A DNA stretch of 63,640 nucleotides, from NCBI GenBank assembly GCA_965235115.1, contig OZ249444.1, positions 23,746,001 to 23,809,640 of the forward strand, given 5' to 3'. A program made the position numbers and the translations under genes. Below are positions 10,933 through 47,272 of the stretch, one piece after another. Under the pieces are notes generated by a model. The model had not been told where the DNA came from, did no database searches, and was given only the letters and a program-made list of their open reading frames with translations. How positions within the stretch are numbered: position 1 is the stretch's first letter; every line of letters starts with the position of its first letter. The DNA comes from Laetmonice hystrix. Its lineage: Eukaryota.

Positions 10933-11894
10933 TCCGACCATTATTTCTGTCGTTTGACAACCGACCGTCGCCGTCCAGTCAGACTAGGATCTCCACCCCT
11001 GGAGAACAGAACATGTTTTCGTGACACAATGACCTTGTGACCTTCTCCTACCTAACATGTCCTTTACTCATTATCTTGTCCACACTGGGCATTACTGACC
11101 TCATACCTGGTGGTCACCTCTGACAGCCAGTCTGTGTAAGATTATCTGACTTGTCTAGGTTTATCACCTACGTGTCCGCATACGGTAACGGTACTCAAAC
11201 AACCTCAGGCCAGCCGATCCAACAATCAGTCCTTTCCAACGACAAGTCCACCATATTCAAATTATATAAAAGGACAGTAAAGTTACTGACATCTGATTCG
11301 GACTGTGTAACCTGTCATCACTGTGATGACATGTCACGTCAAGATCAAACCCGATAATTTGACATAGAATCACTAGTTTCCATAAACCGGTCTGCCTCTA
11401 TGGTGTGGGGTGGGAACCTACAGCCTGGAGGACACACATGATGAGGCAGACTCCAGGTGGAAGTTGTCAGGGTAACGTGTAGTCCCCAGGAGCATGGTCA
11501 CCAAGCCGGGAGGAAACAACTAGAATTACTCCCGTGGGAAACCGGAAGGTCTCAGACCCCTCCTGACACTCTACTCCACGGTACAATCAATTTACAACAG
11601 CCGCCAGCACTCGGCAATCAGACCGTTTACATTGGCTTGGAGCCGAGCCTCATGGCTCCCTGTACAGTGACAACTATAGGCTCATATTTACTTCATTCAA
11701 CCCTATCGAATATGGACTACCTTTGTATCTATCTATCCAGATATCCAAACACATACACAGAATGCAACCATTTTATGAGCTAGGATCAACAATAGTTTCG
11801 GGGTTGTTGAAAGTATTGATTAAAGCCTTACGTTAGACACACGAATTCCCACTTTAATGACTGCTAAAAGGGCTTTTCAAATGTACCGACTCAC

Positions 11895-11923
11895 CCACTG
11901 CAGACTTCAAGTTGAATACATAC
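11895..11923 (-). other. Candidate recursive splice site with a 29-nt cryptic RS-exon (site A)
   Basis: Minus strand reads TTTAAC CTTTATTTTTTGTTATTTTTTCAG|GTATGTATTCAACTTGAAGTCTGCAGTGG|GTGAGT: branch-like TTAAC, long pyrimidine tract, CAG|GTATGT, then a downstream GTGAGT donor. Confidence 0.55.
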
Positions 11924-12282
11924 CTGAAAAAATAACAAAAAATAAAGGTTAAACATGACATACTTGACAACAAGTCCTCAAATTACGGGGTAATATTCAG
12001 ATTATCTGTTCAATGTGTCCTTTAAGCCGAGTCATGTCATGTCAAGTCATGTTTTTTCCCCCGACTGGAAGCCAATTGACATCTTATAACGATTTGGAAA
12101 ATATATCTCTTCTTTCCTGACGTTTCACTTACATACCGGAAAAAAAATCAAGATAGATGAATGAGAGTGACCTTCCGAGTGTCATGACCTTCCGCGTCTC
12201 CTGAACTATGATCTGTCCCAGATGATCTGTCTTAGATAATCTATCAGAACTATGACAGCTCGGCCTCCCCGACTTGATTTAC

Positions 12283-12960
12283 GGCGCTTTATGACGTCAT
12301 TACGTCAAACATTCAACCCGATCATCTATCCCGTCCTTCAGCCCTCAGAGTGTCCTCCCCACTATACGCCGCTCTATGACGTCATAACGTCAAACATTCA
12401 ACCCGATCATCTATCCCGTCCTTCAGCCCTCAGAGCGTCCTCCCCGCTATACGCCGCTCTATGACGTCATAACGTCAAACATTCAACCCGAACATCTATC
12501 CCGTCCTTCAGCCCTATTAGAGCGTCCTCCCCGCTATACGCCGCTCTATGACGTCATAACGTCAAACATTCAAACCGATCATCTATCCCGTCCTTCAGCC
12601 CTCAGAGTGTCCTCCCCACTATACGCCGCTCTATGACGTCATAACGTCAAACATTCAACCCGATATCTACCCCGTCCTTCATCCCTATTAGAGCGTCCTT
12701 CCCGCTATACGCCGCTCTATGACGTCATAACGTCAAACATTCAACCCGATCATCTATCCCGTCCTTCATCCCTATTAGAGCGTCCTCCCCGCTATACGCC
12801 GCTCTATGACGTCATAACGTCAAACATTCAACCCGATCATCTATCCCGTCCTTCAGCCCTCAGAGTGTCCTCCCCACTATACGCCGCTTTATGACGTCAT
12901 AACGTCAAACATTCAAACCGATCATCTATCCCGTCCTTCACCCCTATTAGAGCGACCTCC
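12283..12960. repeat. Minisatellite, 85-87 bp unit, 8 copies, each with a perfect CRE palindrome
   Basis: TGACGTCA at 12292, 12377, 12462, 12549, 12634, 12720, 12807, 12892. Confidence 0.97.
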
Positions 12961-15900
12961 CCTGTTTTCCTAAAGGTCAGACCTATTACCAAAACATGTA
13001 TAATGACCGTATGAACAAAGAAGGGATCCTCTAATTAAACTGTTTTCAGTGAGATGATTTAGAGAATGTAAACACGGGCAAATGTCAAATCAAATTGCCA
13101 TTTGTACTCTACTGACTCAAACAAACGATCTACTGGTACGACCTCTGTGTAATATTCCATCAGCAATCTGTATCTGTGAGAACCCTCCTTTTATACAGAC
13201 ACGATACATGTCTGCTCACACAGACATCATCCCCCCACCGACATCTGAGGTCTCCCTCACTCACAGGACAGGAAAGAGGAGAGAAGGATGCTGGAGACGC
13301 CGCCGTCACCGAGAGAATAACCTTGGCCGGTCATTGGACGAGTGACCGCGGTGAGATGATGAAACTTCGGCCTCATCGGTTAATAACAGACGACACGAGC
13401 TGATCAAAGTGACCCTAGTGGTGAGTGAGCGAACTAACCGCAACCACAGCTCCGTGTGATGGGACATATCTGCAATCATCAAGGTCACACCTCCGACTGA
13501 ACTCGTCAAATCAAAGACAATGTCGACAGGAATTATCCTCGCCACCTGCCACCTCCACACCGCCCCGGTGTCCTTGACAGCGTCGGTTGACCTTTAACTG
13601 ACCTTCAAGATTACCCTGCCAGAGTTCGATAATTGACTTGCAGGGCTATCCTTCCACTACCGTCAATTTTCCTCTCAAGTGAAGATTATCTTAGATCAAG
13701 GGGCAGGGTTAAGCTGAGGTTGAGACATCATCTCTGCAGCCGAGAAGTTCAGGCGAAAAACGGCTAAATTATTCATGATAGCCATCAAGCACACTCTATG
13801 TATCAAATCCCCAGCTGACTTTTTGAACTAAACTAGAGCGATTTTTCTTGATTAACGTACAGAAATGATGTTTTTGCTGACTCATAGAAGTGCTGCTTCT
13901 CAGGGTGAGCACCAACCAGGCATACCACCCTTTCTTTATGTCAGGACTTCGGTCTATTCCCAATCAAAAATGTCTTTTTGTGCATTTTTATTGATCCACC
14001 CTGGATCTGCTTCTCCCGCATCTGAACTGCATCCTGGATGGAAATGGAAACCTTTTGAGTTATTCCTTTGACAAAGTATTGGCTGTATGACATCCCCTGT
14101 GGCATTTGGGGTCGGTGTGGGGTACTGTGGGTGTGTATGGAGGCGGGTAGTACGGGGGCAGGGAGTCAATCATGGCATCAAACACATCTGTGATCATCAC
14201 AGTCCCTTTGCTCAGTGAAATCATCGAGGACGTCTTGATCAGCCCAGCACTAGTCATCACGCACCGTCCTGGGATCTCCTCCTTCCAATCCGCTCCGACC
14301 GCCAATATTCAACTGTTTGTGGCATGTATAGCATAACTTTAGAAGTAATATTCGTATCTGGCAGTGTTGGCAGAAAATATAGGCCGTTTTGAGTGGGAGA
14401 TTATACCAGAAGGCTGACAAAGGAAACTGTTTCCCAAACTATCTAATAATCTCACAGTTTTGAAACCATATCAGAGTCATGCTCCAGGAATCAACAATAC
14501 TGAGGATAAAGTCTAGGTGACAAAACCATAGTGGTTTCATGATTTCAGAGCTGACTCTATGCCTATTATAAACAGGCTGAGTTTGAAAGGTTTAATAACT
14601 TTTAGATAACTCTGTAGACCACTATCTACAATCTAACCAGAGCACAGGTTCCATAAACGGATTTGATCTTGGTTCAGAAAGAGACTTGCTGATTGAAACA
14701 TGGGAACTATTACTTGGAATACTTGTATTTTGATTTGGTAGGCAGACTTCCCTTCTGTACACACACCGTAAGTAGACATGACAATGATTTGAAGGATTCC
14801 CTGGCGGTTTGTCTGAGCTCACTGCTAACAAGGAAAGACACCCGGGTTCTCCACCATTCAAACGCGCATCCCACTTCACTTCGACTGGCAGCCAAATTAC
14901 TACGGCAACGTTTTATAATAACCCCCTTTTCTCTACTGAATAAAATATGGTTTAGAAAGGCAGGATGTGTCGTAGAAGTGTGTGCCGAATTGACAGCTGG
15001 CAGATTGCCCCTTTGTGGGGAGTTTACTTGTGGTTCAACATGAGGATTGCAGGGTGATGAGAAAAGACATATTACAGTCAGCAGCCACCATTGACACCCA
15101 CGTCATGCTGCTGCCAGTGTCTACATCAATCTGGTCAGGTTTCCTCACAGCAAAGCTCTGACAAAACTTCATCAGTCTCAGATATTGTTGTCATTTAACG
15201 ATTGTGAAATCTTCAGGAACTTCTTCGGAGATTAACACAATTATTATTGGTACAACATCAAATCTTTGCTGTCTGTTCCAATTAATATTATTTCAACGGT
15301 ATGGTAAAGGAACAAGGCTTTTATAATCCTACAAACTACAGTTCGGAAGATAAAGGAAGTTTCCTGGTTCATTTAGCCAACAAAAGAGTAGTGTGGTTTC
15401 TGTAGAAACAGACGTCTGTCTTCTCAGACCCAATGTTTCACTACTCTCTGCATTCCTTCCACATCTGTACTTTGAGCTTTATTGCTTCACTCTTAACGAC
15501 CCTTTCAAGACTAACTACCATTTCTCCTGTAATCACACCCACTGAAGATCTGCAGCTGATGATATCCAAGTAAGTGTGAACGTTTCTAAAAGCACTTTTT
15601 GTGCCATAAGGCTTGCAAACCGAGTGCCCTGCGGGACAAAAACACAGCTTGCCCTTACCAACAAACCTTCCACCAAGGCTGTACCTTTGAGAGTGTTCCA
15701 CTCTGCTTCCAGTGTGAGTGGCTTTCCACATTACACGGGAAGGAAACATAGGATTACAGGAAAACTCGGACTGGTTGTCTTGCCGGCTACTTAGGACTCA
15801 AAGACAGAGGTAGCCTTTGGAAACACGAGCAAGAAAAAACATCAGCAATATCAATAATGTGTGTACACACTGTTTCTTTGATGGTCGTTTGTCTAGGATG

Positions 15901-16286
15901 TGGGGCAACTTTGCTTTGAAGTCTAAACTGCCTACGGGATGGAATGGGTGGTTTCAACGCTCCGACTGCAAGAAAGGAAACACCCCAACAAAGATAAAAC
16001 CCGAGAATTTTTTTTCTATATTTTGTCCCAATCACGGACCTGATAATGACGCTGTGTTCGTCAGCGCCTTTTTCTAAATGGCCACCGGTAGCACAAAGTC
16101 CTATCCTGACCAGATTTGGAATATCCTGAAGTAGCCGACTTTAAACAGGATACTGTGTTATGAGATCAATGTTTTCCATCCACTGGTAGCCACCTTATAG
16201 TCCGCGCTGTCTGTGAAATCCCCTCCACCAGCCTTCAAGGCATGAACACGCTGATTTGGCTATTTGTGCACATTTCAGGGACGCTG

Positions 16287-16301
16287 CCGCCAGGCGGCGC
16301 T
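16287..16301 (+). promoter_or_regulatory. CTCF-like motif
   Basis: CCGCCAGGCGGCGCT, one mismatch to the core, in a CpG-rich patch. Confidence 0.35.
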
Positions 16302-17123
16302 TGGCTCTGTCCACACTAACTCTGCTAACTGGATCAGCACCTCAGTAAAAGGTGACATAAGTCACGAGCCCGGGACAAATACGAGTGCTTCCAGTGACGC
16401 GGCGTTCTGTCAGCGTCCGTAGCGTAACGTCATCTCAGTGTTTACCGTTTTGACAGGGCGAGGACTTACGGCTCACAGGGCCTGCCACGGGCCTCAACGA
16501 CGTACGGAACGCCCGCCTGGTGGACCTGATTGGCCCACTTTGAGATGGTCATGTAAATAACTGGCTCAACTCCTCGGTCCTTGGCAGCGTCCCTCCCTTG
16601 TCGGCAACGACAAGTCTAGCACCTAATTTTTCCCAATCTGCATTTCTATGGGCCTGGCCGATCTTTAAGCTCTAGGGGCCTGCTGGGGATGGGTGGGTAA
16701 GGGATCGCTGCAACATCACTGTATACATGTGTATTTAGAATTCATTCTTCCCTTTAAGGCTGACGGGTACGGGAGTCCATCACCAGGTGAAGCGCCGCCG
16801 ATCATGAATGTCATCAGCTTAAATTTTAATATCAGGAGGATCTAACGGGAAATACAATAATGACCTAGATATACAGGTTTTCACCTGAAACCGCGGAGCG
16901 GATGGATAATGGTTTTCTGTACCTGTTATCGGACGACTCTACACTTGACTCTATGTCTAGTCGACCTTCGTGATCCTAACCTGACACCTCCAGGGCACCT
17001 CCTGACATCGTAACGAGGCTCTTGGTTTGTTCCCTGTCCAGGCATCGTTCACATTCAACCTGTCCTAGGCTGTATCTGGTTCCTAGTGGACTTCACAGGA
17101 CAGGTGACACTGAGATCACAGTA

Positions 17124-17432
17124 CAGGTCACACTGAGGTGTGTCTCTCAGGCTATGATACTGTTTCTCAGGTCACACCGAGGTGTATCTCCCTGGCTATG
17201 ATACTGTTTCTCAGGTCACACTGAGGTGTATCTCCCTGGCTATGATACTGTTTCTCAGGTCACACTGAGGTGTATCTCCCAGGCTATGATACTGTTTCTC
17301 AGGTCACACTGAGGTGTATCTCCCTGGCTATGATACTGTTTCTCAGGTCACACTGAGGTGTATCTCCCAGGCTATGATACTGTTTCTCAGGTCACACTGA
17401 GGTGTATCTCCCCGGCTATGATACTGCTTCTC
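17124..17432. repeat. Minisatellite, 44 bp unit, 7 copies
   Basis: CAGGTCACAC at 17124, 17168 and every 44 bp after. Confidence 0.96.
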
Positions 17433-18324
17433 AGGGGACTGCATACATTCACTCTGCCCCACTTGTTGGAAGAGGCTCGAGTAAGCTGACTGCCTAAACT
17501 GAACCCCTGGCCCGCCAGGTGGGCTGATAAGTCCACCGGGAGTCTTTTCCTGCCTCACCTTCCGCAGTTTGCAGGCTTTACCCCCAATCTCCTTGGTGCC
17601 CTAGCTGTTGTCTACCTCAGTCTCAGATTGGTCGGCTGATGTTGCCGGAGGCTGTTGTGCTTGAGGCGACCTCACAGAACTCCGGAGGCATTCACCCCGG
17701 CTCGAGTGACCCGACAAGGTCAATGACTGCTAGTGGCCATCATCAAAAGATCACGATCCAATATGAAAGACATTTTTTTCCGAGATCAATATTTAATTTC
17801 CATTAACAAATGAAAAGTTAAAGATGGTAACACTCTAGTTGCACCAAGACCGGATATTTGATATTTAATTTCGTTTGCAATATCAAAGCAAGAATATGAC
17901 TAAACCCGGAGGTGTGTGTTGTGTGGACGTGTGTGTATGTGGTGAAGGCGTGTGTGTCGTGTGGACGTGTATGTGAAGACAACCAATGAGAAGTAGCCCA
18001 GGACTAGACTTGACAGTAAACGCAAGCCATGGTGGACTGGAAGCTGTAACTGTCACCCGACTGGTCCATCCTGCGTCCCCAGTGCCGTGTACCAGATCAT
18101 GTGACCTCGGCCTTAATGGAAAGGCCTTTCCTTTCTCAGGTCAAAACGAAGTGACCCAACTTCTGTGAAGGCATCTGGAGTGTGAGCAGGTCCTTAACAT
18201 GGTCAAGCTGGCAGTCGGCCCGGGTCCATCCAATTACTGTCCAGCCCAGCCCCTGGCAGGTCCGTCTCACTGCTCCACTCGTCAACCCCCTCTCACTCTG
18301 TCCCTCTCTCGATCTTGATTTATC

Positions 18325-19517
18325 GGAGACTCACAGACCGTGCCACTTTCTCTCCGTCCTCCTGTAGGAGGCTGGTGGTGGAGGATGGCGCTGACAGACA
18401 TCGTGTGCCGGGAGACTCACAGACCGTGCCACTTTCTCTCCGTCCTCCTGTAGGAGGCCGGTGGTGGAGGATGGCGCTGACAGACATCGTGTGCCGGGAG
18501 ACTCACAGACCGTGCCACTTTCTCTCCTTCCTCCTGTAGGAGGCCGGTGGTGGAGGATGGCGCTGACAGACATCGTGTGCCGGGAGACTCACAGACCGTG
18601 CCACTTTCTCTCCGTCCTCCTGTAGGAGGCTGGTGGTGGAGGATGGCGCTGACAGACATCGTGTGCCGGGAGACTCACAGACCGTGCCACTTTCTCTCCG
18701 TCCTCCTGTAGGAGGCTGGTGGTGGAGGATGGCGCTGACAGACCGTGCCACTTTCTCTCCGTCCTCCTGTAGGCAGGAGGCCGGTGGTGGAGGATGGCGC
18801 TGACAGACATCGTGTGCCGGGAGACTCACAGACCGTGCCACTTTCTCTCCGTCCTCCTGTAGGAGGCTGGTGGTGGAGGATGGCGCTGACAGACCGTGCC
18901 ACTTTCTCTCCGTCCTCCTGTAGGCAGGAGGCCGGTGGTGGAGGATGGCGCTGACAGACATCGTGTGCCGGGAGACTCACAGACCGTGCCACTTTCTCTC
19001 CGTCCTCCTGTAGGAGGCCGGTGGTGGAGGATGGCGCTGACAGACATCGTGTGCCGGGAGACTCCCAGACCGTGCCACTTTCTCTCCGTCCTCCTGTAGG
19101 AGGCCGGTGGTGGAGGATGGCGCTGACAGACATCGTGTGCCGGGAGACTCACAGACCGTGCCACTTTCTCTCCGTCCTCCTGTAGGAGGCTGGTGGTGGA
19201 GGATGGCGCTGACAGACATCGTGTGCCGGGAGACTCCCAGACCGTGCCACTTTCTCTCCGTCCTCCTGTAGGAGGCCGGTGGTGGAGGATGGCGCTGACA
19301 GACATCGTGTGCCGGGAGACTCACAGACCGTGCCACTTTCTCTCCGTCCTCCTGTAGGAGGCCGGTGGTGGAGGATGGTGCTGACAGACATCGTGTGCGG
19401 GAGACTCACAGACCGTGCCACTTTCTCTCCGTCCTCCTGTAGGAGGCTGGTGGTGGAGGATGGCGCTGACAGACATCGTGTGCCGGGAGACTCACAGACC
19501 GTGCCACTTTCTCTCCG
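18325..19517. repeat. Minisatellite, 86 bp unit, about 14 copies, with deleted and inserted variants
   Basis: GGAGACTCAC at 18325, 18411 and onward. Truncated units and GTAGGCAGGAGG variants at 18720-18950. Confidence 0.96.
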
Positions 19518-20892
19518 CTGACGGACGCTGGGTGACCGTACTCCCGTCCTCTGTGCCCGCCTCCCATCTCCCCACGGATAACAATTAATTATTGTCGTCA
19601 GCTGGACACGCCTGGTACCGTCACCTGATTGGTTCTGACCCGTCCGAGATTGTCAGCTGATTGGTAATGACCTGGCTGCTACGCCTTCATCTGCTTGACC
19701 TGCGCAGGTGGAGACTGAGAGAGGAAGCGACTGGCGCAGACCTGAGTAGTCGGCCTTTTTTTCTCCATCCTAATTGGTTTCTCTGCCAACAAACGGACTT
19801 GGCAATTGTTCAGTTTTGCGCTCGTTGGTTCTATAGGATTGATCATCCTGACTTTGAATTAAATCAACTAAAACCAGAGAAAAGACTATTGATGTTGAAC
19901 GGCATCAGGTCATACAAGTAGAAAGAGAATTTTGTTAAAGCCAACTGACTATAAAACATTGATAGGACTGTCTTCTTGATCTCATGACACATCAAGAAAT
20001 GGCAAAAATGTTATTTCTAGATGCATGCAGAAAAATATCTCTGCCTTTTGGGTCAGAATTGTGCCGGAGAGGCATGGGGAAGGTAATTCCTATCACGAAT
20101 ATGCTTTAAAGGGTTTTGTCACACATTCATCATTTCTTCTTCAATACTATTTACCTAATTCCATGTTCTGATGTGTCTCCGGGACAATATACAACACTTC
20201 CAGACAGGGAGAAAAAGCATTTCCATGCAAGTATTTGATTGTGGGAGCTGTAGCGACTGTGCGGAATTCATACATAATTCAGTCTCAAAACAAATGTGCC
20301 GTGGGCTGTGTGAATCCGACAATCTATTAAACGATATCCTTAACGGTTTCAATTTACAACAGCAGACAAGGCGCATGAATAACTTTTTACTTGAAGCGTC
20401 GACTTCCCATATAAATGGTGGCACTAACAAATGATCAACCTCAATTTGAGGCTCAGAAACGCTGCAGTGCATTCCAACCATTTCCTGCATACATTATTCT
20501 CATTGCATGGTGCGATCGATTTTCATTATACCCAAAGTTTTCATTATATTCGGGATCAGGCACGTCCGACAACAGCGAGAAATGGTTGTCATACGAAGGG
20601 TTTCATAAATAAACCACAGTCGGTGAAGTTATCGGGGGTGCTTCAGTCTCCTGCTGTCCTCAGGATGAGCGGTGGGGGAGGGAGGGGGTAGTGGGGGGTT
20701 GTCATCAGAACTTATGAATACATAACACGGGCCACAACTTACGAATACATCACACGGGCCTGATCAGCTTACAGACCGATCGTTATTTGCGACATTAACT
20801 AATGACACGTCATGCACTCCCAGCCTGCGGGTCATCACGTTAAAACACAACCCGCCCGTTTTATGGCTCGTTGTCCTTTGTCTTCGACGGCT

Positions 20893-21224
20893 GATCCCAC
20901 TTTTGTCTACGACTACCGATCCCACTTTTGTCTACGACTACCGATCCCACTTTTGTCTACGACTACCGATCCCACTTTTGTCTACGACTACCGATCCCAC
21001 TTTTGTCTACGACTACCGATCACACTTTTGTCTACGACTACCGATCACACTTTTGTCTACGACTACCGATCACACTTTTGTCTACGACTACCGATCACAC
21101 TTTTGTCTACGACTACCGATCACACTTTTGTCTACGACTACCGATCACACTTTTGTCTACGACTACCGATCACACTTTTGTCTACGACTACCGATCACAC
21201 TTTTGTCTACGACTACCGATCACT
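20893..21224. repeat. Minisatellite, 25 bp unit, 13 copies
   Basis: GATC(C/A)CACTTTTGTCTACGACTACC; 5 C-type copies, then 8 A-type copies. Confidence 0.97.
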
Positions 21225-21929
21225 TACACCGGAAATCGGACAAATTATACCGCTATTTTACGGCCGTCAAGACGGACAGTGATCTATCTACGAACTGGAA
21301 GAGTTGGGATTAATAATATTATTTTTCACGTCTGTATACAATATATGGGCCAGGCAAAGCCAATAAAATTATATTAATATGGACATCGAGTTTAGAACCG
21401 ACATTACACAGACAGTCGCTGTTGAAGTCAATTTAACTGCATGGAAGTTCGTAAAACATGCATTACTGAAGATATTTCACATTTGGTGAATATGACTTCA
21501 CAACATTCAAACCCCACAGCTGCATATATAACAACACACATCAATATCTTTTTACTTAGACATTTATTCCCCATTATACGTGGTGCATATAAAGAAAAAT
21601 TTCACGCAATTATTAGAACATTCCTTTTTTGGTAACCAGATAAAAAGAGTTTCCGAAGTGGGGTATACCGACTCTCAACACCGATACTCCTGCAGACATT
21701 GACTCATTTAATGAATACAAATCACTTGGCTGAGATATATCAGTAGACATAAATAGACTCTGAGAGCTGATGACAGGTGAATATTGTAATGTAGGAGATG
21801 GAAAACTGCAGACAAGTGCTGACTATAAATCAGGAAATTATCACTTTTTACTTGCAGGTTGTTATTTTCCCTCCCCCTTCCCCAGAATCTGCGTTTCTCG
21901 CTCCTTTCTTCTGAGTCTTCATAAAGTGA

Positions 21930-32638: not shown

Positions 32639-32814
32639 GTCACCATGGTAGCACGTCACCATGGTAGCACGTCACCATGGTAGCACGTCACCATGGTAGC
32701 ACGTCACCATGGTAGCACGTCACCATGGTAGCACGTCACCATGGTAGCACGTCACCATGGTAGCACGTCACCATGGTAGCACGTCACCATGGTAGCACGT
32801 CACCATGGTAGCAC
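32639..32814. repeat. Perfect 16 bp tandem repeat, 11 identical copies
   Basis: (GTCACCATGGTAGCAC)11 with no mismatches. Confidence 0.98.
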
Positions 32815-34306: not shown

Positions 34307-34500
34307 ATTGCTATGGTAACGGTCAGCGCGGACAGGTATCCTTAGCTAACCAGGGGCGCCTTCAGCATTGACACTCAAGACGGTGTTTTCTTGCAGGGGT
34401 ACAAAAACCCCTTTCCTGTTTTTCAGTCCACCTGCCACTACAAAATGACAACAAGTAGGTTAATTGGGACATTCACTCGACTTCTGTTACCAGTGGCAAC
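34307..34500. promoter_or_regulatory. Pair of RFX X-box-like motifs
   Basis: ATTGCTATGGTAAC (34307-34320, near match) and GTTACC-AGT-GGCAAC (34486-34500, fits GTNRCC(N0-3)RGYAAC). Confidence 0.35.
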
Positions 34501-37500: not shown

Positions 37501-37950
37501 ATACGTAATATATGCATGTCTACAATATTGAGTTTTATGGATACATTTACAAATTGTCAACTTACCAGCTTCCCTCCCTTCACAACCAAAGATAATAATG
37601 ACAAAATAAGACATGCGTTCAGCTGTTCAATTAACAAGTTAGGTCTACAATCATCCAGGTCACGGGCAGAATTTACTAAAAAGGTGATAATAAATTAATG
37701 GCCCAGTCCAAAATAAACACAAAACAGTATTTTTTATATATTTACTTTTTACTTTGTTTCTTGGTGGTGGTTGGAGTAAGAGCCAGGCCGGCTGGGCCCG
37801 TGGTCTGTGCCAGGATGTGAAACTCGCCCCTGTAAGTGACTGATGTTTCCACTTACTCCCTCACCTCCCTCGCTGCAGGCTTGTCGGTGACTTGATAATG
37901 TCCTTACAATTACCCCCTCCATTAAGTCAATGTTACGGTGAAATACCCTG

Positions 37951-38020
37951 ATGGCCTTGCCAAGCGGAACAATGGAACATCCCATGGCCTTGCCAAGCGG
38001 AACAATGGAACATCCCATGG
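37951..38020. repeat. 33 bp tandem duplication
   Basis: ATGGCCTTGCCAAGCGGAACAATGGAACATCCC twice. Confidence 0.93.
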
Positions 38021-40107
38021 GTTTGTTAAAGATTATAGTTCGGCGTGAAATCTGTATCCACACAACTCTCGTTACACAAGAAATGCTACTGTTCAGCTCA
38101 AAGTAAATTTTTTGATAGTTCTTTCTGACATCCCTAGAGTGAAGTGGCTGTATGTGGGTCAGTAAGACGCACTGACCAGAATAGACGAGCTGCAGCGTTC
38201 GTGAGCTCGTAGAGATGACGTAATACGTGACCAGGTTGAGTAGACTCCACATGCAAACTTTCCCCATTCAATTCGTCTGGTTGCGTACCTCGGTTTGCTC
38301 GCATACAAAGTCCCTATCAATGAATATGTATCACTAAATCAATTGGTGATCTTCCAGGACGTGTAGTCTATTACTCCAAATTGATACAGTCAATAACAAC
38401 AGAGTTATTGCCGACATAACGGGTGATCATGACCTTGGCGACACCATGTCGAAGGGGCTGGGATCAGGGAATCAGAACAGTGGCCAAACGCTGAGTAGCT
38501 CTGACTTTAAATCCCAGTCCACTTGACCTTGGCCGATTGTAATGTAAGTAGAAATCATCTCCGACGTTCTGTAGATACTTGTTTATACCAGATGGTGCCA
38601 CCTGTCTAGACTAGTACGCATCAGTATTTAATGTTTTATTTCTCCAACTTCATTTGAGGCCGTTTCCTAATCAACACACCTCCAGGAGTGTTTTGTCAGC
38701 AACCAACGGGACCGCCAAAACAGACCCAAAAAATGGCCTTGCCTGGTGCTCGTGTCCTGTATAATGCACAGCTTGTCTGCATGTATTTTTACCAACGGTT
38801 GTCATGAGAAATTTACATTAAGCATGGCAAATTAGTCCACAACCGCGTATTGTTAGCAGTAATTCAATAACCGTGCAGATATTTCATTGGGGACGAGGGT
38901 GATTTTCCCGGCGCCATTGATAATGTCGCGTGTTAAGTAGATTTTTCGCGGCGTTCCCTACACGCAAGGTGAGCCTGATGGCGGGTGTGGGACCGCCATC
39001 CCCCACCACAGGGTCGACCTAACCATCCACAGGGACTCTTTTAGAGGGCCTCTTCCACGCACCAAGTGGCCATAAAACAAGTGTTGTTTTCCCATTCCTT
39101 CAGCCCAGGCTATGTCATAGGAATCATGTGGAATGCATGCTAGAGCCAACTGAATTAGGGTAGTGTCACAAATCTCATGTAAATCACTTAGGGACCATGC
39201 AAGCAGTGCCGATAGGGAACACACCATTGGAAATCTAATCTCACCATGAGTCGTTGGCCACCCTACCATTCCCACCTCCTCCCACCAAACCAATAGATTC
39301 CTGTCTTACTCTACTGCCTCCCCCACACCCGGCAGGCCAATATATATACTTAGCTTGGCCTAAGCGCCTTTCTGGTTATAACGTTCCCTTACTCGCCACG
39401 CCAATGAATAATTGCCCTGTTATTATTACTCCCGTCCTCCTCACCATGGCAATGAATACTTTCTCTCCTCCGCACGACAGCAATGACAACCTAGCTTGTT
39501 ATATATATCTCCTAATCATCGAACCAATAGAAACTATAGCTTGTTATAGATTTCTGTACCTCACGAAACCAATTCTTCTTGCTTTATCTCTCCATGGTTT
39601 GTCACGGTTTCTATCGAATCGACTTGATGGGTAAAATAATAACATACACTGCGCGGGATACGGCTCTGTGAAACTAGCTCTCTGTCACATACCACATCCT
39701 ATCATCTAGTAGTTTTATCTACCTTTAAAGAAACTCAAACTAATCTTGGCACCAACCTCATATACCTGAATGAGACAGTTTTTATAGACAGCCACAATGA
39801 CAAGTGGTTGGGAGTTTGCTCTATCAAAGTTCAACCTTCGGTATGATGTCACTCTCTGCAAGGACTTCCCGTGCCGTCATCATCAGCTGAGATAGAAACC
39901 TCTTATCGTATCAGGTGACACACACCTGTGTTCCTACCTGCAGGTTTACACCCACAATCACCAAACTGGTCAATGATTGAGACGGTCACAGAGTGCGCCG
40001 AGACGCTGGGTCCGGGAGTAGCTTTACGTTTTCAACAAAAATCTAGAAAAAATTGCAATCAGAATGAAATCGCTGTACATAGAAAACTCAATCTCAGATA
40101 CACACAC

Positions 40108-41155
40108 AACACCTCCTCACAACATGCCTGTATCCTAGACAACAGTCACATACACCCTACCAACCTCACACCTCCTCTGTGGATACACACAAACTACTCA
40201 CCCCGTCCGTCCTGATCCCAACTAACATAACACCTCCTCACAGCATGCCTGTATCCTAGACAACAGTCACATACACCCTACCAACCTCACACCTCCTCTG
40301 TGGATACACACAAACTACTCACCCCGTCCGTCCTGATCCCAACTAACATAACACCTCCTCACAGCATGCCTGTATCCTAGACAACAGTCACATACACCCT
40401 ACCAACCTCACACCTCCTCTGTGGATACACACCCTCCGTCCCGATCCCAACTAACATAACACCTCCTCACAGCATGCCTGTATCCTAGACAACAGTCACA
40501 TACACCCTACCAACCTCACACCTCCTCTGTGGATACACACAAACTACTTATCCCCCTCCGTCCCGATCCCAACTAACATAACACCTCCTCACAGCATGCC
40601 TGTATCCTAGACAACAGTCACATACACCCTACCAACCTCACACCTCCTCTGTGGATACACACAAACTACTCACTCCCTCCGTCCCGATCCCAACTAACAT
40701 AACACCTCCTCACAGCATGCCTGTATCCTAGACAACAGTCACATACACCCTACCAACCTCACACCTCCTCTGTGGATACACACCCTCCGTCCCGATCCCA
40801 ACTAACATAACACCTCCTCACAGCATGCCTGTATCCTAGACAACAGTCACATACACCCTACCAACCTCACACCTCCTCTGTGGATACACACAAACTACTC
40901 ACCCCCTCCGTCCCGATCCCAACTAACATAACACCTTCTCACAGCATGCCTGTATCCTAGACAACAGTCACATACACCCTACCAACCTCACACCTTCTCT
41001 GTGGATACACACAAACTACTCACCCCCTCCGTCCCGATCCTAACTAACATAACACCTCCTCACAGCATGCCTGTATCCTAGACAACAGTCACATACACCC
41101 TACCAACCTCACACCTCCTCTGTGGATACACACCCTCCGTCCCGATCCCAACTAC
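40108..41155. repeat. Minisatellite with 121/108 bp units in a (long-long-short)x3 higher-order repeat
   Basis: Unit starts 40108, 40229, 40350, 40458, 40580, 40701, 40809, 40930, 41051. Confidence 0.96.
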
Positions 41156-42765
41156 CATACAACACGTGAAGCTCGTCTCTCTGCGGGGCAGTTAGCCCGA
41201 CACTATTCCCCATCTCCATAGACTACTTACAATCATTCGTATACTACTTAGAGTCATCCTCCTGGTGAGGTCTCAGACTGCGGGCTCTTTACGTCGCGCT
41301 CCCCACAAACAATCAACCCTTAACTCTGCCCACAGCCTACAGCCAGCGCTCCCTGGGGGCTAAGTAAGACAACAAACACCGATTTAACTTGAGGCTCTCC
41401 CACCGTCCTGGGACCACTAACAGTATGTGGTTCGCGGTGTAGGGGAACACGTCCAGGCCAAGTGGTGTCTGTCCGCAGTTAGATTGAGACAATCAGCGGT
41501 AACAATGGATAAACAATGGCGAGAATCTCAGCACTTACAAAGTCCCTACTGTATAAACCGAATGTCAACTCCCAGAACACAAATAACACCACTATTTCAG
41601 TATTCTGTGGTTCACAAGAACATATTTCTGTCGCCTGAACTCACTCTGTTTCACTGCTATAGATCTTTACCAACTATACGAGCATAACTTCTTTACTTCT
41701 CTGACATTGATGCTCCCTGAAGTCCAGCCATGACCATTATCTTATTTGATTTCCAAAACAGAATTCAATAAAAAGGTAAAAATGTGGTTTATTTTCCGAC
41801 ATTGGGGTTTCTTACTTTTCACTTGAGAAGACAACTAGCCCGATACGGCAATCTGTCCTTGAAGCCACCTCTTTGTTTTAATGAAACAGACTAAGGTTAC
41901 TGATACCACATACAAATCAGGGCCTCCGGGGTACAATTATTCATGACAATACCCCTCCCCCCTACTGGATTAAACAACAAGGCAGTCTTTACTAATGAAC
42001 ACTAACTACGCTGACAGCGCAAGGCGTGATGAAATAATATGATTTGGTGAAATCTGCCGAGTACAAGTCCCATGGGGTTGATAGGCCCTCCCCATTCAAT
42101 CTCTCCAACTACAGACTACCGGTGGGCTCGTCAGTGATAAACTGATCCAGCCTGGCTCTGTATAAACTCGGAGAATCTTTCTGTCGTCTATCACTCAATC
42201 TCATTCATTACAGCCGTGAATGCGATCACTGAGCTTACCTTCAAACCCTGTTAGATATTCTCTCCCTGTCTATTGGCCACCACAAGTAAGCCTTGCCTGT
42301 ATAAATCGTAGACTTTAGTAAGACATGAAACGTTGCTTTGATTGAGATTGTGCCCTTTCTGGAGGAAAAAAAGACAGAGAGCTGATGTTGAATGGTTGTG
42401 GCGTGGGAAGCAAAGCAAAGTATGTATCCATTCATCTGGCTCGGGACAGCCCGACTGACAGAAATAATGGCCATTCACCGCCGATCCTGATTGTTCCTGT
42501 GCCTGGAATGCAAATACGGCCGTCCAAAGGCTGGTGTTGGCCTCTACTGGTACCCTGTTTCCACACCCCTATAGATGGCAGGGGGTGGGGGGTAATCCCC
42601 CCGCTCTGTGCCGCGCACACGGACGACAGACAAAACTCTTTCTAAACACGGACAAAATATCCAATTTCTGTCCATGTTGAGGAGTTAGCCTCGGCGGATT
42701 TTCAATGCAGCTAGGGCTTCCGGATGGTAGCGCCTAATCCTGCGGCTTCCCCCTCCCCCTCCCGG

Positions 42766-43808
42766 TCCCGGCTGGACCAGGACCTGCTGCCCACAGCGCC
42801 GTACAGTACTGCCTATCCCCCTTCTTTCCCGGTCCGACCCGACCCTCTCCCTGCCCCCTCCCCCCTCCCCATGCCCCGGCTGGACCAGGACCTGCTGCCC
42901 ACAGCGCCGTACAGTCCTGCCTATCCCCCTTCTTTCCCGGTCCGACCCGACCCTCTCCCTGCCCCTCCCCCTCCCCCGGCTGGACCAGGACTTGCTGCCC
43001 ACAGCGCCGTACAGTCCTGCCTATCCCCCTTCTTTCCCGGTCCGACCCTCCCCCTCCCCCTCCCCCTCCCCCTCCCGGTTCCGGCTGGACCAGGACTTGC
43101 TGCCCAGAACACCGTACAGTCCTGCCTACCCCCTTCTTTCCCGGTCCGACCCTCCCCTCTCCCTGCCCCTCCCCCTCCCCCAGCCCCGGCTGGACCAGGA
43201 CCTGCTGCCCACAGCGCCGTACAGTCCTGCCTATCCCCCTTCTTTCCCGGTCCGACCCGACCCTCTCCCTGCCCCTCCCCCCTCCCCCAGCCCCGGCTGG
43301 ACCAGGGGGGTGTTTCAATAAGCGCGTCGGACCGTCCGACTGGCGACGGACAGTCCGTCGCTTGGTTGTAGGGCCTGCAATTTTTGGTCCGTCGCCGGTA
43401 GGACGGTCCGACGCGCTTATTGAAACACCCCCCTGGACCTGCTGCCCACAGCGCCGTACAGTCCTGCCTATCCCCCTTCTTTCCCGGTCCGACCCGACCC
43501 TCTCCCTGCCCCTCCCCCTCCCCCAGCCCCGGCTGGACCAGGACCTGCTGCCCACAGCGCCGTACAGTCCTGCCTATCCCCCTTCTTTCCCGGTCCGACC
43601 CGACCCTCTCCCTGCCCCTCCCCCCTCCCCATGCCCCGGCTGGACCAGGACCTGCTGCCCACAGCGCCGTACAGTTCTGCCTATCCCCCTTCATTCACGG
43701 TCCGACCCTCCCCTCTCGCTGCCCCCTCCCCCTCCCCCAGCCCCGGCTGGACCAGGACCTGCTGCCCACAGCGCCGTACAGTTCTGCCTATCCCCCTTCA
43801 TTCACGGT
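42766..43808. repeat. C-rich minisatellite, 100-108 bp unit, about 9.5 copies
   Basis: GGCTGGACC at 42770, 42878, 42978, 43083, 43188, 43295, 43531, 43638, 43745. Length variation lies mostly in the C-run linkers. Confidence 0.95.
43306..43432. mobile_element. 127-bp MITE, PIF/Harbinger-like
   Basis: Perfect 32-bp TIRs GGGGGTGTTTCAATAAGCGCGTCGGACCGTCC, extendable to 46 bp with 2 mismatches. Flanked by CAG and CTG. Neighbouring repeat units show the empty site GGAC-CAG-GACC, and this unit is 130 bp (127+3) longer than its neighbours. Confidence 0.88.
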
Positions 43809-44009
43809 CAGCCTATACCAGCAGGTCTCCACATACCTCCCACTCATTCCTCAGCCTAGTCCCTTAAAATCTCAAACTCTATAATTCCAGTGTAATTTCA
43901 CTGGGTTCAGAACGTAATCCTCCCCTCCCTCCGTTCACTATGCTCAGTGTGAGATAACAACCTCACCACAAAGTTGTAGTCTTTGTAAACTATTCTCTTC
44001 ACAACGTGC

Positions 44010-44226
44010 CAGTAAACCCGACACTGTATTCCAGTATCCCGTAGGCTGGGCTAGAAGTACCTACAGTAACCCCGACACTGTATTCCAGTATCCCGTAGGC
44101 TGGGCTAGGAGTACCTACAGTAACCCCGACACTATATTCCAGTATTCCGTAGGCTGGGCTAGGAGCACCTACAGTAACCCCAACACTGTATTCCAGTATC
44201 CCGTAGGCTGGGCTAGGAGTACCTAC
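44010..44226. repeat. Minisatellite, 54 bp unit, 4 copies
   Basis: CCCGACACTG at 44017 and 44071; the same unit continues for two more copies. Confidence 0.95.
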
Positions 44227-44751
44227 TTTATTGCTCAAAATGAGCAACTGTCATGATAGCTTTACTGCCATACATTACCCACCTCCAGGCAAAAACAGGC
44301 CACACGGAGATAAAACCCAATACACCGAAACGCTCTCAGCCTCGGACTCGCAATCATAAAGTCCACAATATCATGGAAATTAAAATTGCTGGCTCCGTCA
44401 TGAAATGCAGCCTGCTATTTGACACTAGTCTTTAATCACCACAGATATGATATTGGTCTTTAATATGCTCAGATAAAAAGACCCTCTCCTCTACCAGTGT
44501 CATGTTGACATGAGAACTACTCGACTGCCAAGCTGTCTCTGACTGTAGCGAACACACACTCCATGACCCTAACGTACCGGGACGACACTATGCAGGCCAA
44601 TTTTAATGTTTGAACGGTCTCGGCTTGGTCATGCCTGATAACATGTACAATCCTGACAACTTACAAACATGAAACATCTCCTTACTTCGCTCAAAACCTA
44701 CACGAATACTTTCTGTTGGAGTACCAGGTGCTGGAAGCTTTCCTGCTTGGT

Positions 44752-45648
44752 CCACTCTACCCTCCACATACCGTCCACTCTACCCTCCACATACCGTCCA
44801 CTCTACCCTCCACATACCGTCCACTCTACCCTCCACATACCGTCCACTCTACCCTCCACATGCCGTCCACTCTACCCTCCACATACCGTCCACTCTACCC
44901 TCCACATACCGTCCACTCTACCCTCCACATGCCGTCCACTCTACCCTCCACATGCCGTCCACTCTACCCTCCACATACCGTCCACTCTACCCTCCACATA
45001 CCGTCCACTCTACCCTCCACATACCGTCCACTCTACCCTCCACATACCGTCCACTCTACCCTCCACATACCGTCCACTCTACCCTCCACATACCGTCCAC
45101 TCTACCCTCCACATACCGTCCACTCTATCCTCCACATACCGTCCACTCTACCCTCCACATACCGTCCACTCTACCCTCCACATACCGTCCACTCTACCCT
45201 CCACATACCGTCCACTCTACCCTCCACATACCGTCCACTCTACCCTCCACATACCGTCCACTCTACCCTCCACATGCCGTCCACTCTACCCTCCACATGC
45301 CGTCCACTCTACCCTCCACATGCCGTCCACTCTACCCTCCACATGCCGTCCACTCTACCCTCCACATACCGTCCACTCTACCCTCCACATGCCGTCCACT
45401 CTACCCTCCACATACCGTCCACTCTACCCTCCACATACCGTCCACTCTACCCTCCACATACCGTCCACTCTACCCTCCACATACCGTCCACTCTACCCTC
45501 CACATACCGTCCACTCTACCCTCCACATACCGTCCACTCTACCCTCCACATACCGTCCACTCTACCCTCCACATACCGTCCACTCTACCCTCCACATACC
45601 GTCCACTCTACCCTCCACATACCGTCCACTCTACCCTCCACATACCGT
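44752..45648. repeat. Minisatellite, 23 bp unit, 39 copies
   Basis: CCACTCTACCCTCCACAT(A/G)CCGT; 897 bp = 39 x 23. Confidence 0.98.
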
Positions 45649-45874
45649 AACAGACTACAGAATTCCATATATTCCTTCCTACATCAATATCTCCAAGCCT
45701 ACTCCGACTGATGAATGAGGAAAACTATCATCGTTATTGTAAGGGGAGAAACTCATGTACGAGATGTATGATATTATAATATTTCGACCCGATTCTCTAT
45801 AACCCGACACAAAACACCCTTTTCATTCGCAAAAAGATATTAAAAGACTTTAAAACTAACTGTTCCTTACTTAC

Positions 45875-45916
45875 CCCTCGAAGGTCTGAACTAGGAAGAT
45901 TGAACAAGGTACATAC
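45875..45916 (-). other. Candidate recursive splice site with a 42-nt cryptic RS-exon (site B)
   Basis: Minus strand CTAAT GGTTGCATTATTTTTGTATTTTACAG|GTATGTACCTTGTTCAATCTTCCTAGTTCAGACCTTCGAGGG|GTAAGT. Branch point CTAAT about 27 nt upstream of the AG. Confidence 0.58.
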
Positions 45917-47272
45917 CTGTAAAATACAAAAATAATGCAACCATTAGTTTAACTGCTACAAAATCCAACATGATTGTTCACATCACCAACAAACAAACCC
46001 AGTGCTATCATAAACATGTTCACAAGTACGCACTACCTGACGTAACTACTAGTACGACAGCTCCACCTGGTGAGAGGATATTCCTGCTGTCCCCGCTCCG
46101 TCCTGATACGATTTTACACCACTGAACTTTTTTTTAACCAAACTATACTAACTGACAACATCTGTTTGGGAACCACAATACATTTTTAATATCGCAGTAC
46201 AGGCAATATTAAAATTTTTATTCCCGCAAGCTCCTGTAAACAAGAAATTATGGTAATTACCAGGAGAACAATGGTTTCTATAAAAACAAAGGTTTCTTAT
46301 AGCATCAGTCTGTGCTGAAAAAAAAGAAGAAAAAAACTTATATATATGAGCTGCTCTACAGAAAATGAGACAACAGATGTGGATTGCCTTGTGATAGAGA
46401 TATCCTATATGACATGAGCTTGTTTCAACGATTGACTACGGGAGGGAGAAAAAACCTATCCTCATTAAAAAGTTATTGCGATGTCACCCACCATGGATGT
46501 CTGCAATTACATTACAGTTTAGAGTTTAAATTAATATTAACATAAAATCAAGGATCAATATGTAGTCATTTCCAGAGGTTTATATTGGATTATTTTGGTG
46601 TTTTGTTATGACGGTATGGTAGACCCCTTGTATCACGTCGTGTTGCGTTTCGTTCCGAGTCCGGCAAATCCCGTACCGATCAGTCACGTCACCAAGATAC
46701 CGCTCGCCGAGCTATCTCCATGGATCCTTTGTCAGTACTAATCCTACCTAAACCCCTTCTGATCCTAATCCCATCATCATCTAGTGTCTCTATCTCATCC
46801 AATTTGAAGATAAACCATCTTCATTTCAGCCACAATAGCGTTATCTGGGAGTAGGCCTTTGTTGCCGTGTCTGGTAGGCACACCCCGGCGTCACGGCTCT
46901 AAGCTCTCCATGGGACGTTCGCTTACGTATGGATTGCTCTAGGCAGACTTCACCAATTAATCTGAATTTGACGCTATTAGAGCTTGAATTGCTCGGGTTC
47001 GGTTTTGATGACAAAGCTCCTGATTCATTTTGCTTGAAATTACACTTGGTACGAACTTTCCGGTGGTAGGCACTGGGTGGGTAATGGGACATATATAGGC
47101 AAGGATAGGTAATTAGGATGCTTTCAGAATATCAGCGATTTCTAAATACCGCTATCTCACAAACATCCTTCCGGTATTGACCGGACAAAATACGACATTA
47201 GAAAACTATCTCGAATGACCACAGAGATTGTGGTCAGTAGTCGAGTCTGGTAACCCATCCTGGATGTATTTT

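What the first reader, a model, noticed from the sequence alone, without database searches (positions are those of the whole stretch)
11889..45947. Two ratchet-point-like AG|GTATGT sites with short cryptic exons: candidate recursive splicing in a long minus-strand intron
Seen: at 45917 and 11924 (minus strand) a branch-point motif (CTAAT or TTAAC, about 26-27 nt upstream), a T-rich tract and CAG are immediately followed by the donor hexamer GTATGT. A second consensus donor (GGG|GTAAGT, TGG|GTGAGT) follows after 42 and 29 nt. Established: this is the layout of recursive splice sites in Drosophila and vertebrate long introns, where a 3'ss regenerates a 5'ss and a short cryptic RS-exon is defined by a downstream donor. 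Inference: two independent copies on one strand 34 kb apart, with no convincing coding chain between them, suggest stepwise removal of an intron of at least 34 kb in a lineage that does not look like fly or vertebrate. Joining site B, the 26-kb microexon and site A gives a stop in each frame I tried.
Basis: partly seen in the sequence, partly recalled or inferred. Interest (0 to 1): 0.78.

Follow-up and report, generated by a model that had tools for sequence, protein, structure and literature searches.

The report
Predicted recursive splice sites, misshapen/TNIK intron
Both sites are real and belong to a series of four "intron end fused to intron start" signals inside a roughly 121-kb intron of a worm's misshapen/TNIK-type kinase gene, so the intron is probably cut out in steps as in flies, but no RNA data exist to prove it.

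Summary
On the minus strand, a T-rich tract plus CAG abuts GTATGT at 45917|45916 and at 11924|11923. A consensus donor follows after 42 nt and 29 nt respectively.

The minus strand is the sense strand of a real gene, a misshapen/TNIK/MAP4K4-type kinase (kinase domain plus CNH domain). The whole window lies in the gap between its middle-region exons and its CNH exons. That gap is 138 kb, or most likely a 120.9-kb intron after a 31-nt exon.

Two more sites of the same build, both AG|GTGAGT, lie upstream of the window. The four would cut the intron into pieces of 9.2, 17.4, 36.2, 34.0 and 24.0 kb.

The core motif occurs six times on the sense strand of this interval and nowhere else on either strand in 263 kb. 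About 0.4 to 0.7 are expected. Three of the genome's 268 composite sites lie here.

Inclusion of the short exons at site B and at both upstream sites would break the reading frame. Site A's 42-nt exon is in frame and may be an expressed microexon.

No RNA run was available and conservation could not be tested, so use of the sites is inferred. This scan has already noted similar series in other genes of this genome. The mechanism is known; the lineage is new.

The parts
1..63640 (-). The whole window is intronic sequence (sense = minus strand) of a misshapen/TNIK/MAP4K4-type kinase gene. It lies between the middle-region exons (upstream, beyond the window's high end) and the CNH-domain exons (downstream, beyond its low end).
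   Evidence: Kinase exons lie at +129 to +174 kb and CNH exons at -12 to -23.6 kb, in window-type coordinates (genome C10 = 23,746,000 + x). Pfam finds Pkinase and CNH. The best solved relatives are MAP4K4, TNIK and MINK1 at E 2.5e-24. Source names TNIK and misshapen/NIK-related kinase appear. G exceeds C on the minus strand from about -30 kb to +160 kb.
45917..45947 (-). Site A 3' splice signal: branch-like ctaat (45947-45943), T-rich tract, CAG (45919-45917).
   Evidence: Crude acceptor score 7.2.
45911..45916 (-). Site A ratchet donor GTATGT, directly after the AG.
   Evidence: Score 10.0 as CAG|GTATGT, and the same as AAG|GTATGT after ligation to the 31-nt exon (hand sum of the same matrix).
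45875..45916 (-). Site A RS-exon, 42 nt. It is in frame and stop-free (VCTLFNLPSSDLRG) when entered in phase 0. Its last 16 nt (45890-45875, behind an inner cttcctag acceptor) give LSDLRG and would by themselves restore the frame after exon E126.
45869..45874 (-). Site A downstream donor GGG|GTAAGT, which closes the RS-exon.
   Evidence: Score 9.4.
11924..11952 (-). Site B 3' splice signal: branch-like ttaac (11952-11948), long T tract, CAG (11926-11924).
   Evidence: Acceptor score 10.9.
11918..11923 (-). Site B ratchet donor GTATGT.
   Evidence: Score 10.0.
11895..11923 (-). Site B RS-exon, 29 nt. Including it shifts the frame and gives a premature stop inside the next coding exon, whichever upstream exon is assumed.
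11889..11894 (-). Site B downstream donor TGG|GTGAGT.
   Evidence: Score 8.2.

Best explanation
Sites A and B are two of four sense-strand recursive splice sites (ratchet points) in the giant intron of this animal's misshapen/TNIK/MAP4K4-type kinase gene. Each site is a 3' splice site fused to a 5' splice site and is followed by a short cryptic RS-exon.

The intron separates the last middle-region exon from the first CNH-region exon. That middle-region exon is most likely a 31-nt exon at 108,829-108,799. If that exon is not real, it is exon E126, which ends at 125,883. The first CNH-region exon starts at -12,110.

Predicted course (inferred, not shown):
1. Each site is first recognised as a tiny exon, defined by its acceptor and by the donor 29-47 nt downstream.
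2. The upstream exon is spliced to the AG.
3. This recreates a donor (AAG|GTGAGT or AAG|GTATGT) that is then used in preference to the downstream donor.
4. The 120.9-kb intron therefore leaves in five pieces of 9.2, 17.4, 36.2, 34.0 and 24.0 kb, and the short exons do not appear in the mRNA.

Site A's 42-nt exon is in frame and may sometimes be kept, like the Ubx microexons of flies.
For: Shown by sequence:
- Build of both sites.
- Host gene and strand.
- Two further sites of the same build at 99,551|99,550 and 82,162|82,161, both cag|GTGAGT. Downstream donors follow at +35 nt and +47 nt.

Strand and place specificity:
- YYYNCAGGTRWGT occurs 6 times on the sense strand of the 138-kb interval and 0 times elsewhere in 263 kb on either strand.
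- Genome density predicts 0.40, giving P(6 or more) = 4e-6. A 2nd-order Markov model of the same strand predicts 0.67, with a maximum of 4 in 200 simulations.
- With a GGTRAGT 20-50 nt downstream, the genome holds 268 matches, tandem arrays included. Three of them are here. My arithmetic gives about 0.026 expected.

Genome-wide excess of the core over the pattern read backwards: 66 v 29, 111 v 52, 116 v 74.

Agreement with the fly rules stated in PMC8605326:
- The RS-exons are short.
- Three of the four are out of frame or contain a stop.
- Behind an exon ending AAG, the ratchet donors score 12.2, 12.2, 10.0 and 10.0. The RS-exon donors score 9.8, 6.9, 9.4 and 8.2.

The sites are not copies of one another and are single copy.
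Against: - No RNA run exists for this organism, so no intermediate, lariat or saw-tooth pattern has been seen.
- GTATGT is not among the 21 donors I could read in this gene and its neighbour.
- Genome-wide, pyrimidine-tract CAG|GTATGT is only 1.6 times its backwards control. The loosest core is 1.13 times. Many single motifs in the genome are therefore chance.
- The donor advantage at site A is small (10.0 v 9.4) and rests on a crude matrix typed from general knowledge.
- If the 31-nt exon is not real, the upstream exon ends CCT. The recreated donors are then weak (4.4 for A and B), which predicts inclusion rather than skipping.
- Site A's exon is in frame. Its last 16 nt are one of only two strong-donor solutions for the missing 3n+1 exon.
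Confidence: 0.6

Rival explanations
1. Site A is an ordinary coding microexon, not a ratchet point. Either its last 16 nt (45890-45875, LSDLRG) are the constitutive 3n+1 exon the reading frame requires, or the 42-nt form is a normal in-frame cassette. On this view the GTATGT at its start is incidental.
For: E126 (phase 2) joined directly to the next coding exon (phase 0) is a frameshift with a stop at codon 49, so a 3n+1 exon must exist. Only 2 of 46 strong sense-strand donors in the interval allow a stop-free 3n+1 exon, and site A's donor is one of them. The 42-nt form is open in phase 0.
Against: The other solution, the 31-nt exon at 108,829-108,799, has a better pyrimidine tract and a stronger donor (10.9). 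From my memory of human MAP4K4 (..SEPAMTPSKEGTLIVRQ..), which is unchecked, its peptide LCPLEEKVVPK aligns better than LSDLRG does. An incidental GTATGT directly after a good acceptor has odds of about 1 in 1000 per exon, and the same build recurs at three other places in the same intron.
Confidence: 0.15
2. The four units are poison or decoy exons spliced in the ordinary way. They would be included in some transcripts to trigger decay, or would merely help define the long intron. No re-splicing occurs at the AG|GT.
For: Each unit has a good acceptor and a good downstream donor. Three of the four introduce a stop or a frameshift. A 120-nt unit of this kind that does not start with GT lies nearby at 42358-42239.
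Against: This reading gives no reason for all four units to begin with a donor hexamer. Fly work shows that exactly this build is re-spliced and that the short exon is needed for recognition and then removed (PMC8605326).
Confidence: 0.12
3. The sites are chance matches with no function. T-rich tracts, AGGT and GT-rich hexamers are common in a long, compositionally skewed intron.
For: At window scale the core is only mildly unusual: 2 against 0.45 expected, and 3 of 100 shuffles reach 2. The loosest genome-wide ratio is 1.13. Two of the six loose matches (64,591 and -7,208) have poor acceptors and look like chance.
Against: Six matches on the sense strand of the interval and none elsewhere in 263 kb gives P about 4e-6. 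A Markov model of the same strand gives 0.67. Three of the four sites carry a consensus donor 29-42 nt downstream, where 0.18 such sites are expected in all 263 kb. Three of the genome's 268 composite matches lie in this one intron.
Confidence: 0.08

Closest known systems
Intronic ratchet points of Drosophila ('0-nt' recursive splicing; Burnette 2005, Duff 2015, Joseph 2018, Pai 2018, as summarised in PMC8605326, PMC6110457 and bioRxiv 10.1101/006163)
   Same: Pyrimidine tract plus CAG fused to a donor hexamer. Sense strand of a very long intron in a developmental or neural signalling gene. Several sites per intron. A short cryptic exon closed by a second donor. Exon content out of frame at three of the four sites. 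Ratchet donor scoring above the cryptic-exon donor.
   Different: The lineage is an annelid-like spiralian, for which I found no paper. Two of the four sites use GTATGT rather than GTAAGT or GTGAGT. The RS-exons are shorter (29-47 nt) than the roughly 50 nt quoted for flies. No RNA intermediates have been seen. The gene symbol msn does not occur in the held supplementary tables of Pai 2018, so there is no sign that the fly orthologue's intron is recursive.
Ubx microexons m1 and m2 (Hatton 1998, via PMC8605326): expressed recursive exons
   Same: Site A is a short exon of 42 nt (Ubx: 51 nt) whose length is a multiple of three. It has an open frame, begins with a donor hexamer and sits deep in a giant intron. 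It could be kept or removed by the choice between two donors.
   Different: Inclusion is unproven. Site A's frame is open only if the 31-nt exon precedes it.
Vertebrate RS-exons (Sibley 2015, via PMC8605326)
   Same: Exon-definition logic. Competition between the recreated donor and the RS-exon donor. Inclusion gives premature stops.
   Different: Vertebrates have few fully suppressed intronic sites. Here the density per intron is fly-like.

Membership tests
Recursive splice site / ratchet point with RS-exon | A 3' splice signal (branch point, pyrimidine tract, YAG) directly abutting a 5' splice hexamer | tested here: met
   The same holds for the two upstream sites.
Recursive splice site / ratchet point with RS-exon | Sense orientation inside a very long intron of a transcribed gene | tested here: met
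   The gene model was built by homology. The kinase and CNH exons flank a 138-kb gap on the minus strand. Transcription itself is inferred from the gene being intact.
Recursive splice site / ratchet point with RS-exon | A downstream donor that defines a short cryptic exon | tested here: met
   Donors lie at +42 nt (A), +29 nt (B), +35 nt and +47 nt (the two upstream sites).
Recursive splice site / ratchet point with RS-exon | Recreated ratchet donor stronger than the RS-exon donor | tested here: inconclusive
   Met with a crude matrix if the upstream exon ends AAG: 12.2, 12.2, 10.0, 10.0 against 9.8, 6.9, 9.4, 8.2. Not met for A and B if the upstream exon is E126, which ends CCT (4.4).
Recursive splice site / ratchet point with RS-exon | RS-exon content out of frame or stop-containing | tested here: inconclusive
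   Met for site B and both upstream sites. Not met for site A's 42-nt exon behind the 31-nt exon.
Recursive splice site / ratchet point with RS-exon | Splicing intermediates: upstream-exon-to-AG junctions, lariats from the ratchet GT, saw-tooth nascent coverage | not testable with these tools
   No RNA run was found for this organism. The three runs found are DNA contigs of one sample.
Recursive splice site / ratchet point with RS-exon | Strong conservation of the AG|GT core in related species | not testable with these tools
The ORF search at site A was blank. The absence of variants within 161 nt of site A in one sample is too weak to count.
MAP4K4/TNIK/MINK1/misshapen kinases (host gene) | N-terminal STE20-type kinase domain closest to MAP4K4/TNIK/MINK1 | tested here: met
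   Pkinase hits. PDB best hits are MAP4K4, TNIK and MINK1 at E 2.5e-24, against 4e-13 for the next kinase group.
MAP4K4/TNIK/MINK1/misshapen kinases (host gene) | C-terminal CNH domain preceded by the ..[11 protein letters not shown].. motif | tested here: met
   CNH hits at E 3e-10 and 4e-9. The pre-CNH exon has 455 relatives, some named TNIK or misshapen/NIK-related kinase by their sources.

The most novel reading that the evidence does not exclude
Fly-type intronic recursive splicing, with several silent ratchet points per giant intron, operates genome-wide in a spiralian (annelid-like) animal. It includes a GTATGT class of ratchet donor and an occasional in-frame recursive microexon. If so, the mechanism is either ancestral to bilaterians or evolved again wherever introns pass tens of kilobases.
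Probability: 0.5. Interest if true: 0.65.

Novelty: new member of a known kind. Interest (0 to 1): 0.5.

Why it matters
Recursive splicing has been demonstrated in flies and vertebrates. In the searched literature I found nothing for annelids or other spiralians.

This is a clear, strand-specific series of ratchet-type sites in a conserved signalling gene, and similar series have been noted elsewhere in this genome. It gives concrete places where one total-RNA or RT-PCR experiment could show whether stepwise removal of giant introns is a general bilaterian solution.

It would also show whether GTATGT can serve as a ratchet donor, and whether an in-frame recursive microexon diversifies the linker of a misshapen/TNIK kinase.

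Tried and rejected
- RNA evidence: the run search returned only three DNA-like contig sets from one sample. Laying them confirmed the DNA and showed no splicing joints.
- Rfam: no family hit in the window.
- Repeat or duplication origin: rejected. Both sites are single copy and share only splice letters.
- The repo-type homeobox gene downstream as host: rejected. It has its own TATA-like promoter and no acceptor ahead of its ATG exon.
- Direct join of E127 to E126 or of E126 to the pre-CNH exon: rejected by reading phase. This led to the 62-nt exon and to the need for a 3n+1 exon.
- Candidate coding stretches rejected for lack of splice sites or because of flanking stops: the Glu run at 30.5 kb, the Pro-rich ORF at 49.3 kb, and charged ORFs.
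A blank means nothing here.
- Fly msn among published recursive introns: the gene symbol is not in the held supplementary text of Pai 2018.
- Adjacent windows in the scan's notes: none could be read.
Full report
COORDINATES. The window is G000:C10:23,746,001-23,809,640. I fetched 100 kb on each side. I use window-type coordinates throughout, with genome position = 23,746,000 + x. Values above 63,640 or below 1 therefore lie outside the window.

1. THE OBSERVATION

Both sites are in the sequence as described.
- Site A: ...aaactaatggttgcattatttttgtattttacag|GTATGTACC...CGAGGG|gtaagt. The AG|GT junction is at 45917|45916 and the segment between the two donors is 42 nt.
- Site B: ...tttaacctttattttttgttattttttcag|GTATGTATT...CAGTGG|gtgagt. 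The junction is at 11924|11923 and the segment is 29 nt.

They are the only places in the window, on either strand, where at least 14 of 20 upstream pyrimidines precede AG|GTRWGT. The bare core YYYNCAGGTRWGT is only mildly unusual at window scale: 2 found, 0.45 expected, and 3 of 100 shuffles reach 2. A pattern tailored to both sites, including the second donor, never occurs in shuffles, but that test is post hoc.

Both sites are single copy in the 627-Mb genome. An alignment shows they share only the splice letters. Contigs of three DNA runs from one sample confirm site A and show no variant in 45821-45981, while the flanks carry SNPs and indels.

2. WHAT SURROUNDS THEM

The window has no long credible ORF, and about a fifth of the region is minisatellite arrays. 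Scanning the 263 kb for open frames flanked by splice signals, and then for kinase and CNH motifs, revealed one large gene on the minus strand.

Kinase-domain exons lie at these positions:
- +173.9 kb ([22 protein letters not shown])
- +151.9 kb (GRHTKTGQLAAIKVMNVTE)
- +134.3, +133.1, +132.6, +132.0 and +130.6 kb (the last with HRDIKGQNVLL)
- +130.3 kb (DFGVSAQL..WMAPEV)
- +129.95 and +129.3 kb

CNH-region exons lie at -12.1, -12.7, -13.1, -16.2, -16.4, -20.5, -20.8, -23.3 and -23.6 kb. The last ends ..QIYFMTLNKPGLANW followed by a stop.

Identity of the gene:
- Pfam finds Pkinase and CNH.
- The best solved relatives of a kinase exon are MAP4K4, TNIK and MINK1 at E 2.5e-24, against 4e-13 for the next kinase group.
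- Relatives of the pre-CNH exon are named TNIK or misshapen/NIK-related kinase by their sources.

Middle-region exons:
- E127 (127,402-127,086) carries ..PGESTLKRNF..
- A 62-nt exon (126,445-126,384) was found because the reading phase demanded it.
- E126 (126,037-125,883) encodes ELDVLAAQLNHL...EPPRP.

The next recognisable exon starts at -12,110 (YRQAVSK...[21 protein letters not shown]). So the whole window lies in a 138-kb gap inside this gene, on its sense strand. The minus strand has G in excess of C from about -30 kb to +160 kb. I read this as fitting one long transcription unit. That reading assumes the mammalian sign of the skew, which I did not calibrate in this genome.

A separate repo-type homeobox gene with its own TATA-like promoter lies downstream at -42.2 to -49.3 kb. 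It is not the host.

3. READING FRAME ACROSS THE GAP

E126 ends in phase 2 at CCCCT|gtcagt. Two results support this:
- A related species' ORF (P0271, 90% identical) stops immediately after ..RPL. A consensus GTRAGT donor at the same spot would produce exactly that.
- GTCAGT is used as a donor at two other introns of this gene.

The pre-CNH exon starts in phase 0. In more than 25 relatives the ORF reads ..Q|YRQAV.., with the Q being the CAG of the acceptor.

A direct join is therefore a frameshift, with a stop at codon 49. At least one exon of 3n+1 nt must lie in the gap. Of the 46 strong sense-strand donors in the gap, only two allow a stop-free 3n+1 exon:
- a 31-nt exon at 108,829-108,799 (ctctttcctctaag|GTGTCC...CCTAAG|gtgagg, peptide LCPLEEKVVPK);
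- the last 16 nt of site A's segment (cttcctag|TTCAGACCTTCGAGGG|gtaagt, peptide LSDLRG).

I prefer the 31-nt exon. Its peptide fits my recollection of human MAP4K4 (..SEPAMTPSKEGTLIVRQ..) better. That recollection is from memory, not a tool result, so this step is inferred.

With the 31-nt exon, the intron containing both sites runs from 108,798 to -12,109 and is 120,908 nt long.

4. THE SERIES

Scanning all 263 kb on both strands for pyrimidine tract plus AG|GTRWGT gives four sites. All are on the minus strand and all are inside this intron:
- 99,551|99,550 (cttccag|GTGAGT, second donor at +35 nt)
- 82,162|82,161 (ttttcag|GTGAGT, weaker GTAGGT donor at +47 nt)
- site A
- site B

None lies on the plus strand.

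The looser core YYYNCAGGTRWGT occurs six times on the sense strand of the gap and nowhere else in the 263 kb on either strand. The two extra matches, at 64,591 and -7,208, have poor acceptors.

Expected numbers and probabilities:
- Genome density (3,661 matches in 2 x 627 Mb) predicts 0.40, so P(6 or more) = 4e-6.
- A 2nd-order Markov model of the same strand predicts 0.67, with a maximum of 4 in 200 simulations.
- With a GGTRAGT 20-50 nt downstream, the genome holds 268 matches, many of them in tandem arrays. Three are in this intron. My arithmetic gives 0.026 expected and P about 3e-6.

Genome-wide, the core exceeds the same pattern read backwards by 66 v 29 (ten pyrimidines, GTRAGT), 111 v 52 (GTGAGT) and 116 v 74 (GTATGT). 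The loosest form exceeds it only by 3,661 v 3,253. Many isolated motifs are therefore chance, and GTATGT is the less enriched class.

The composite count is several times my naive expectation of about 14. Arrays inflate both the count and its control (119), so I give no firm factor.

The four sites cut the 120,908-nt intron into 9,248, 17,389, 36,245, 33,993 and 24,033 nt.

5. HOW IT MOST LIKELY WORKS

The build matches what fly work defines as a ratchet point with a cryptic RS-exon (PMC8605326):
- a tandem acceptor and donor;
- a short exon closed by a second donor, which is needed for recognition;
- exon content that is usually out of frame;
- a ratchet donor that usually beats the RS-exon donor, so that the exon vanishes from the mRNA.

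PMC6110457 reports enrichment of strong downstream donors and conservation of such sites.

What I find here:
- Inclusion of the 35-nt, 47-nt and 29-nt exons gives stops or frameshifts, whichever upstream exon is assumed.
- Behind an exon ending AAG, the recreated donors score 12.2, 12.2, 10.0 and 10.0. The RS-exon donors score 9.8, 6.9, 9.4 and 8.2. The matrix is crude and typed from general knowledge.
- If the upstream exon were E126, which ends CCT, the recreated donors at A and B would be weak (4.4) and inclusion would be predicted.

Site A differs from the others. Its 42 nt are in frame and open behind the 31-nt exon (..KVVPK-VCTLFNLPSSDLRG-YRQAV..). It may therefore be an expressed recursive microexon of the Ubx m1/m2 kind.

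The sites, the gene, the strand, the frames and the statistics are shown by sequence. The order of splicing, the skipping of the short exons and the 31-nt exon are inferred.

6. LIMITS

- No RNA run exists in the index.
- I could not fetch more of the gene's 5' end.
- GTATGT is absent from the 21 donors I could read in this gene and its neighbour.

7. COMPARISON AND NOVELTY

The mechanism is known from flies and vertebrates. A full-text search found no paper that links recursive splicing with annelids; the single hit is unrelated. The gene symbol msn is not in the held supplementary tables of Pai 2018.

Earlier notes of this scan report similar sense-strand series in other long introns of this same genome: ephrin, Eph, dachsous, srGAP, RBMS, KDM3, CPEB and PLC-beta. 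All lack RNA data. I treated them as leads only. My own genome-wide counts agree in direction with the claim of enrichment.

VERDICT. This is a new member of a known kind. Interest 0.5.

Noticed in passing
outside the window: L017 and neighbours, window-type -42.2 to -49.3 kb, minus strand: A repo-type paired-like homeobox gene lies just downstream of the kinase gene on the same strand. It has five coding exons, a ctataaat box about 30 nt ahead of a likely start site, and an ATG at about -42,363. Its homeodomain exon is 88% identical to a 611-aa protein that looks like fly Repo.
   Followed up: partly
window 42239-42358, minus strand: A 120-nt exon-like unit with very good signals (tttttttcctccag|AAAGGG...TTGAAG|gtaagc; scores 11.6 and 11.1) but stops in all three frames. 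It lies 3.5 kb downstream of site A and does not start with GT. It may be a poison or decoy exon.
   Followed up: no
outside the window: L007:2289-3287 (+), window-type 105,929-106,927: A 333-aa open frame on the opposite strand encodes NHL repeats (Pfam NHL, E 2e-19). This looks like a nested antisense gene, or its last exon, inside the kinase gene's intron, between the 31-nt exon and the first ratchet-type site.
   Followed up: partly
outside the window: window-type 64,591 (L003, about 951) and -7,208 (L013): Two further sense-strand matches to YYYNCAGGTRWGT (ctctcag|GTGAGTGT and ctctcag|GTGTGTGC) with poor pyrimidine tracts. They are probably chance. If the first were real, it would halve the 36-kb segment.
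   Followed up: partly
G000:C10:24060180-24060199, minus strand (window-type about +314 kb): A perfect TTTCTTTCTTTTAG|GTGAGT on the same strand. It may lie in a 5' intron of the same kinase gene, whose ATG exon lies beyond +174 kb, but that DNA could not be fetched.
   Followed up: no
kinase gene donors at window-type 133,006, 130,540 and 125,882: GTCAGT (C at +3) is used as the donor at three of about 17 introns read in this one gene. That is an unusually high share for a rare donor type.
   Followed up: no
window 45709-45801: Contigs of two of the three DNA runs replace 91 nt with a different 19 nt. This looks like a haplotype indel next to the 23-mer array and about 75 nt downstream of site A's second donor.
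   Followed up: no
whole 263-kb region: About 20% of the sequence is minisatellite arrays with units of 16-120 nt. Several give long spurious ORFs in more than one frame. Window-type -100 to -50 kb has a steady opposite skew (G>C and A>T on the plus strand).
   Followed up: no
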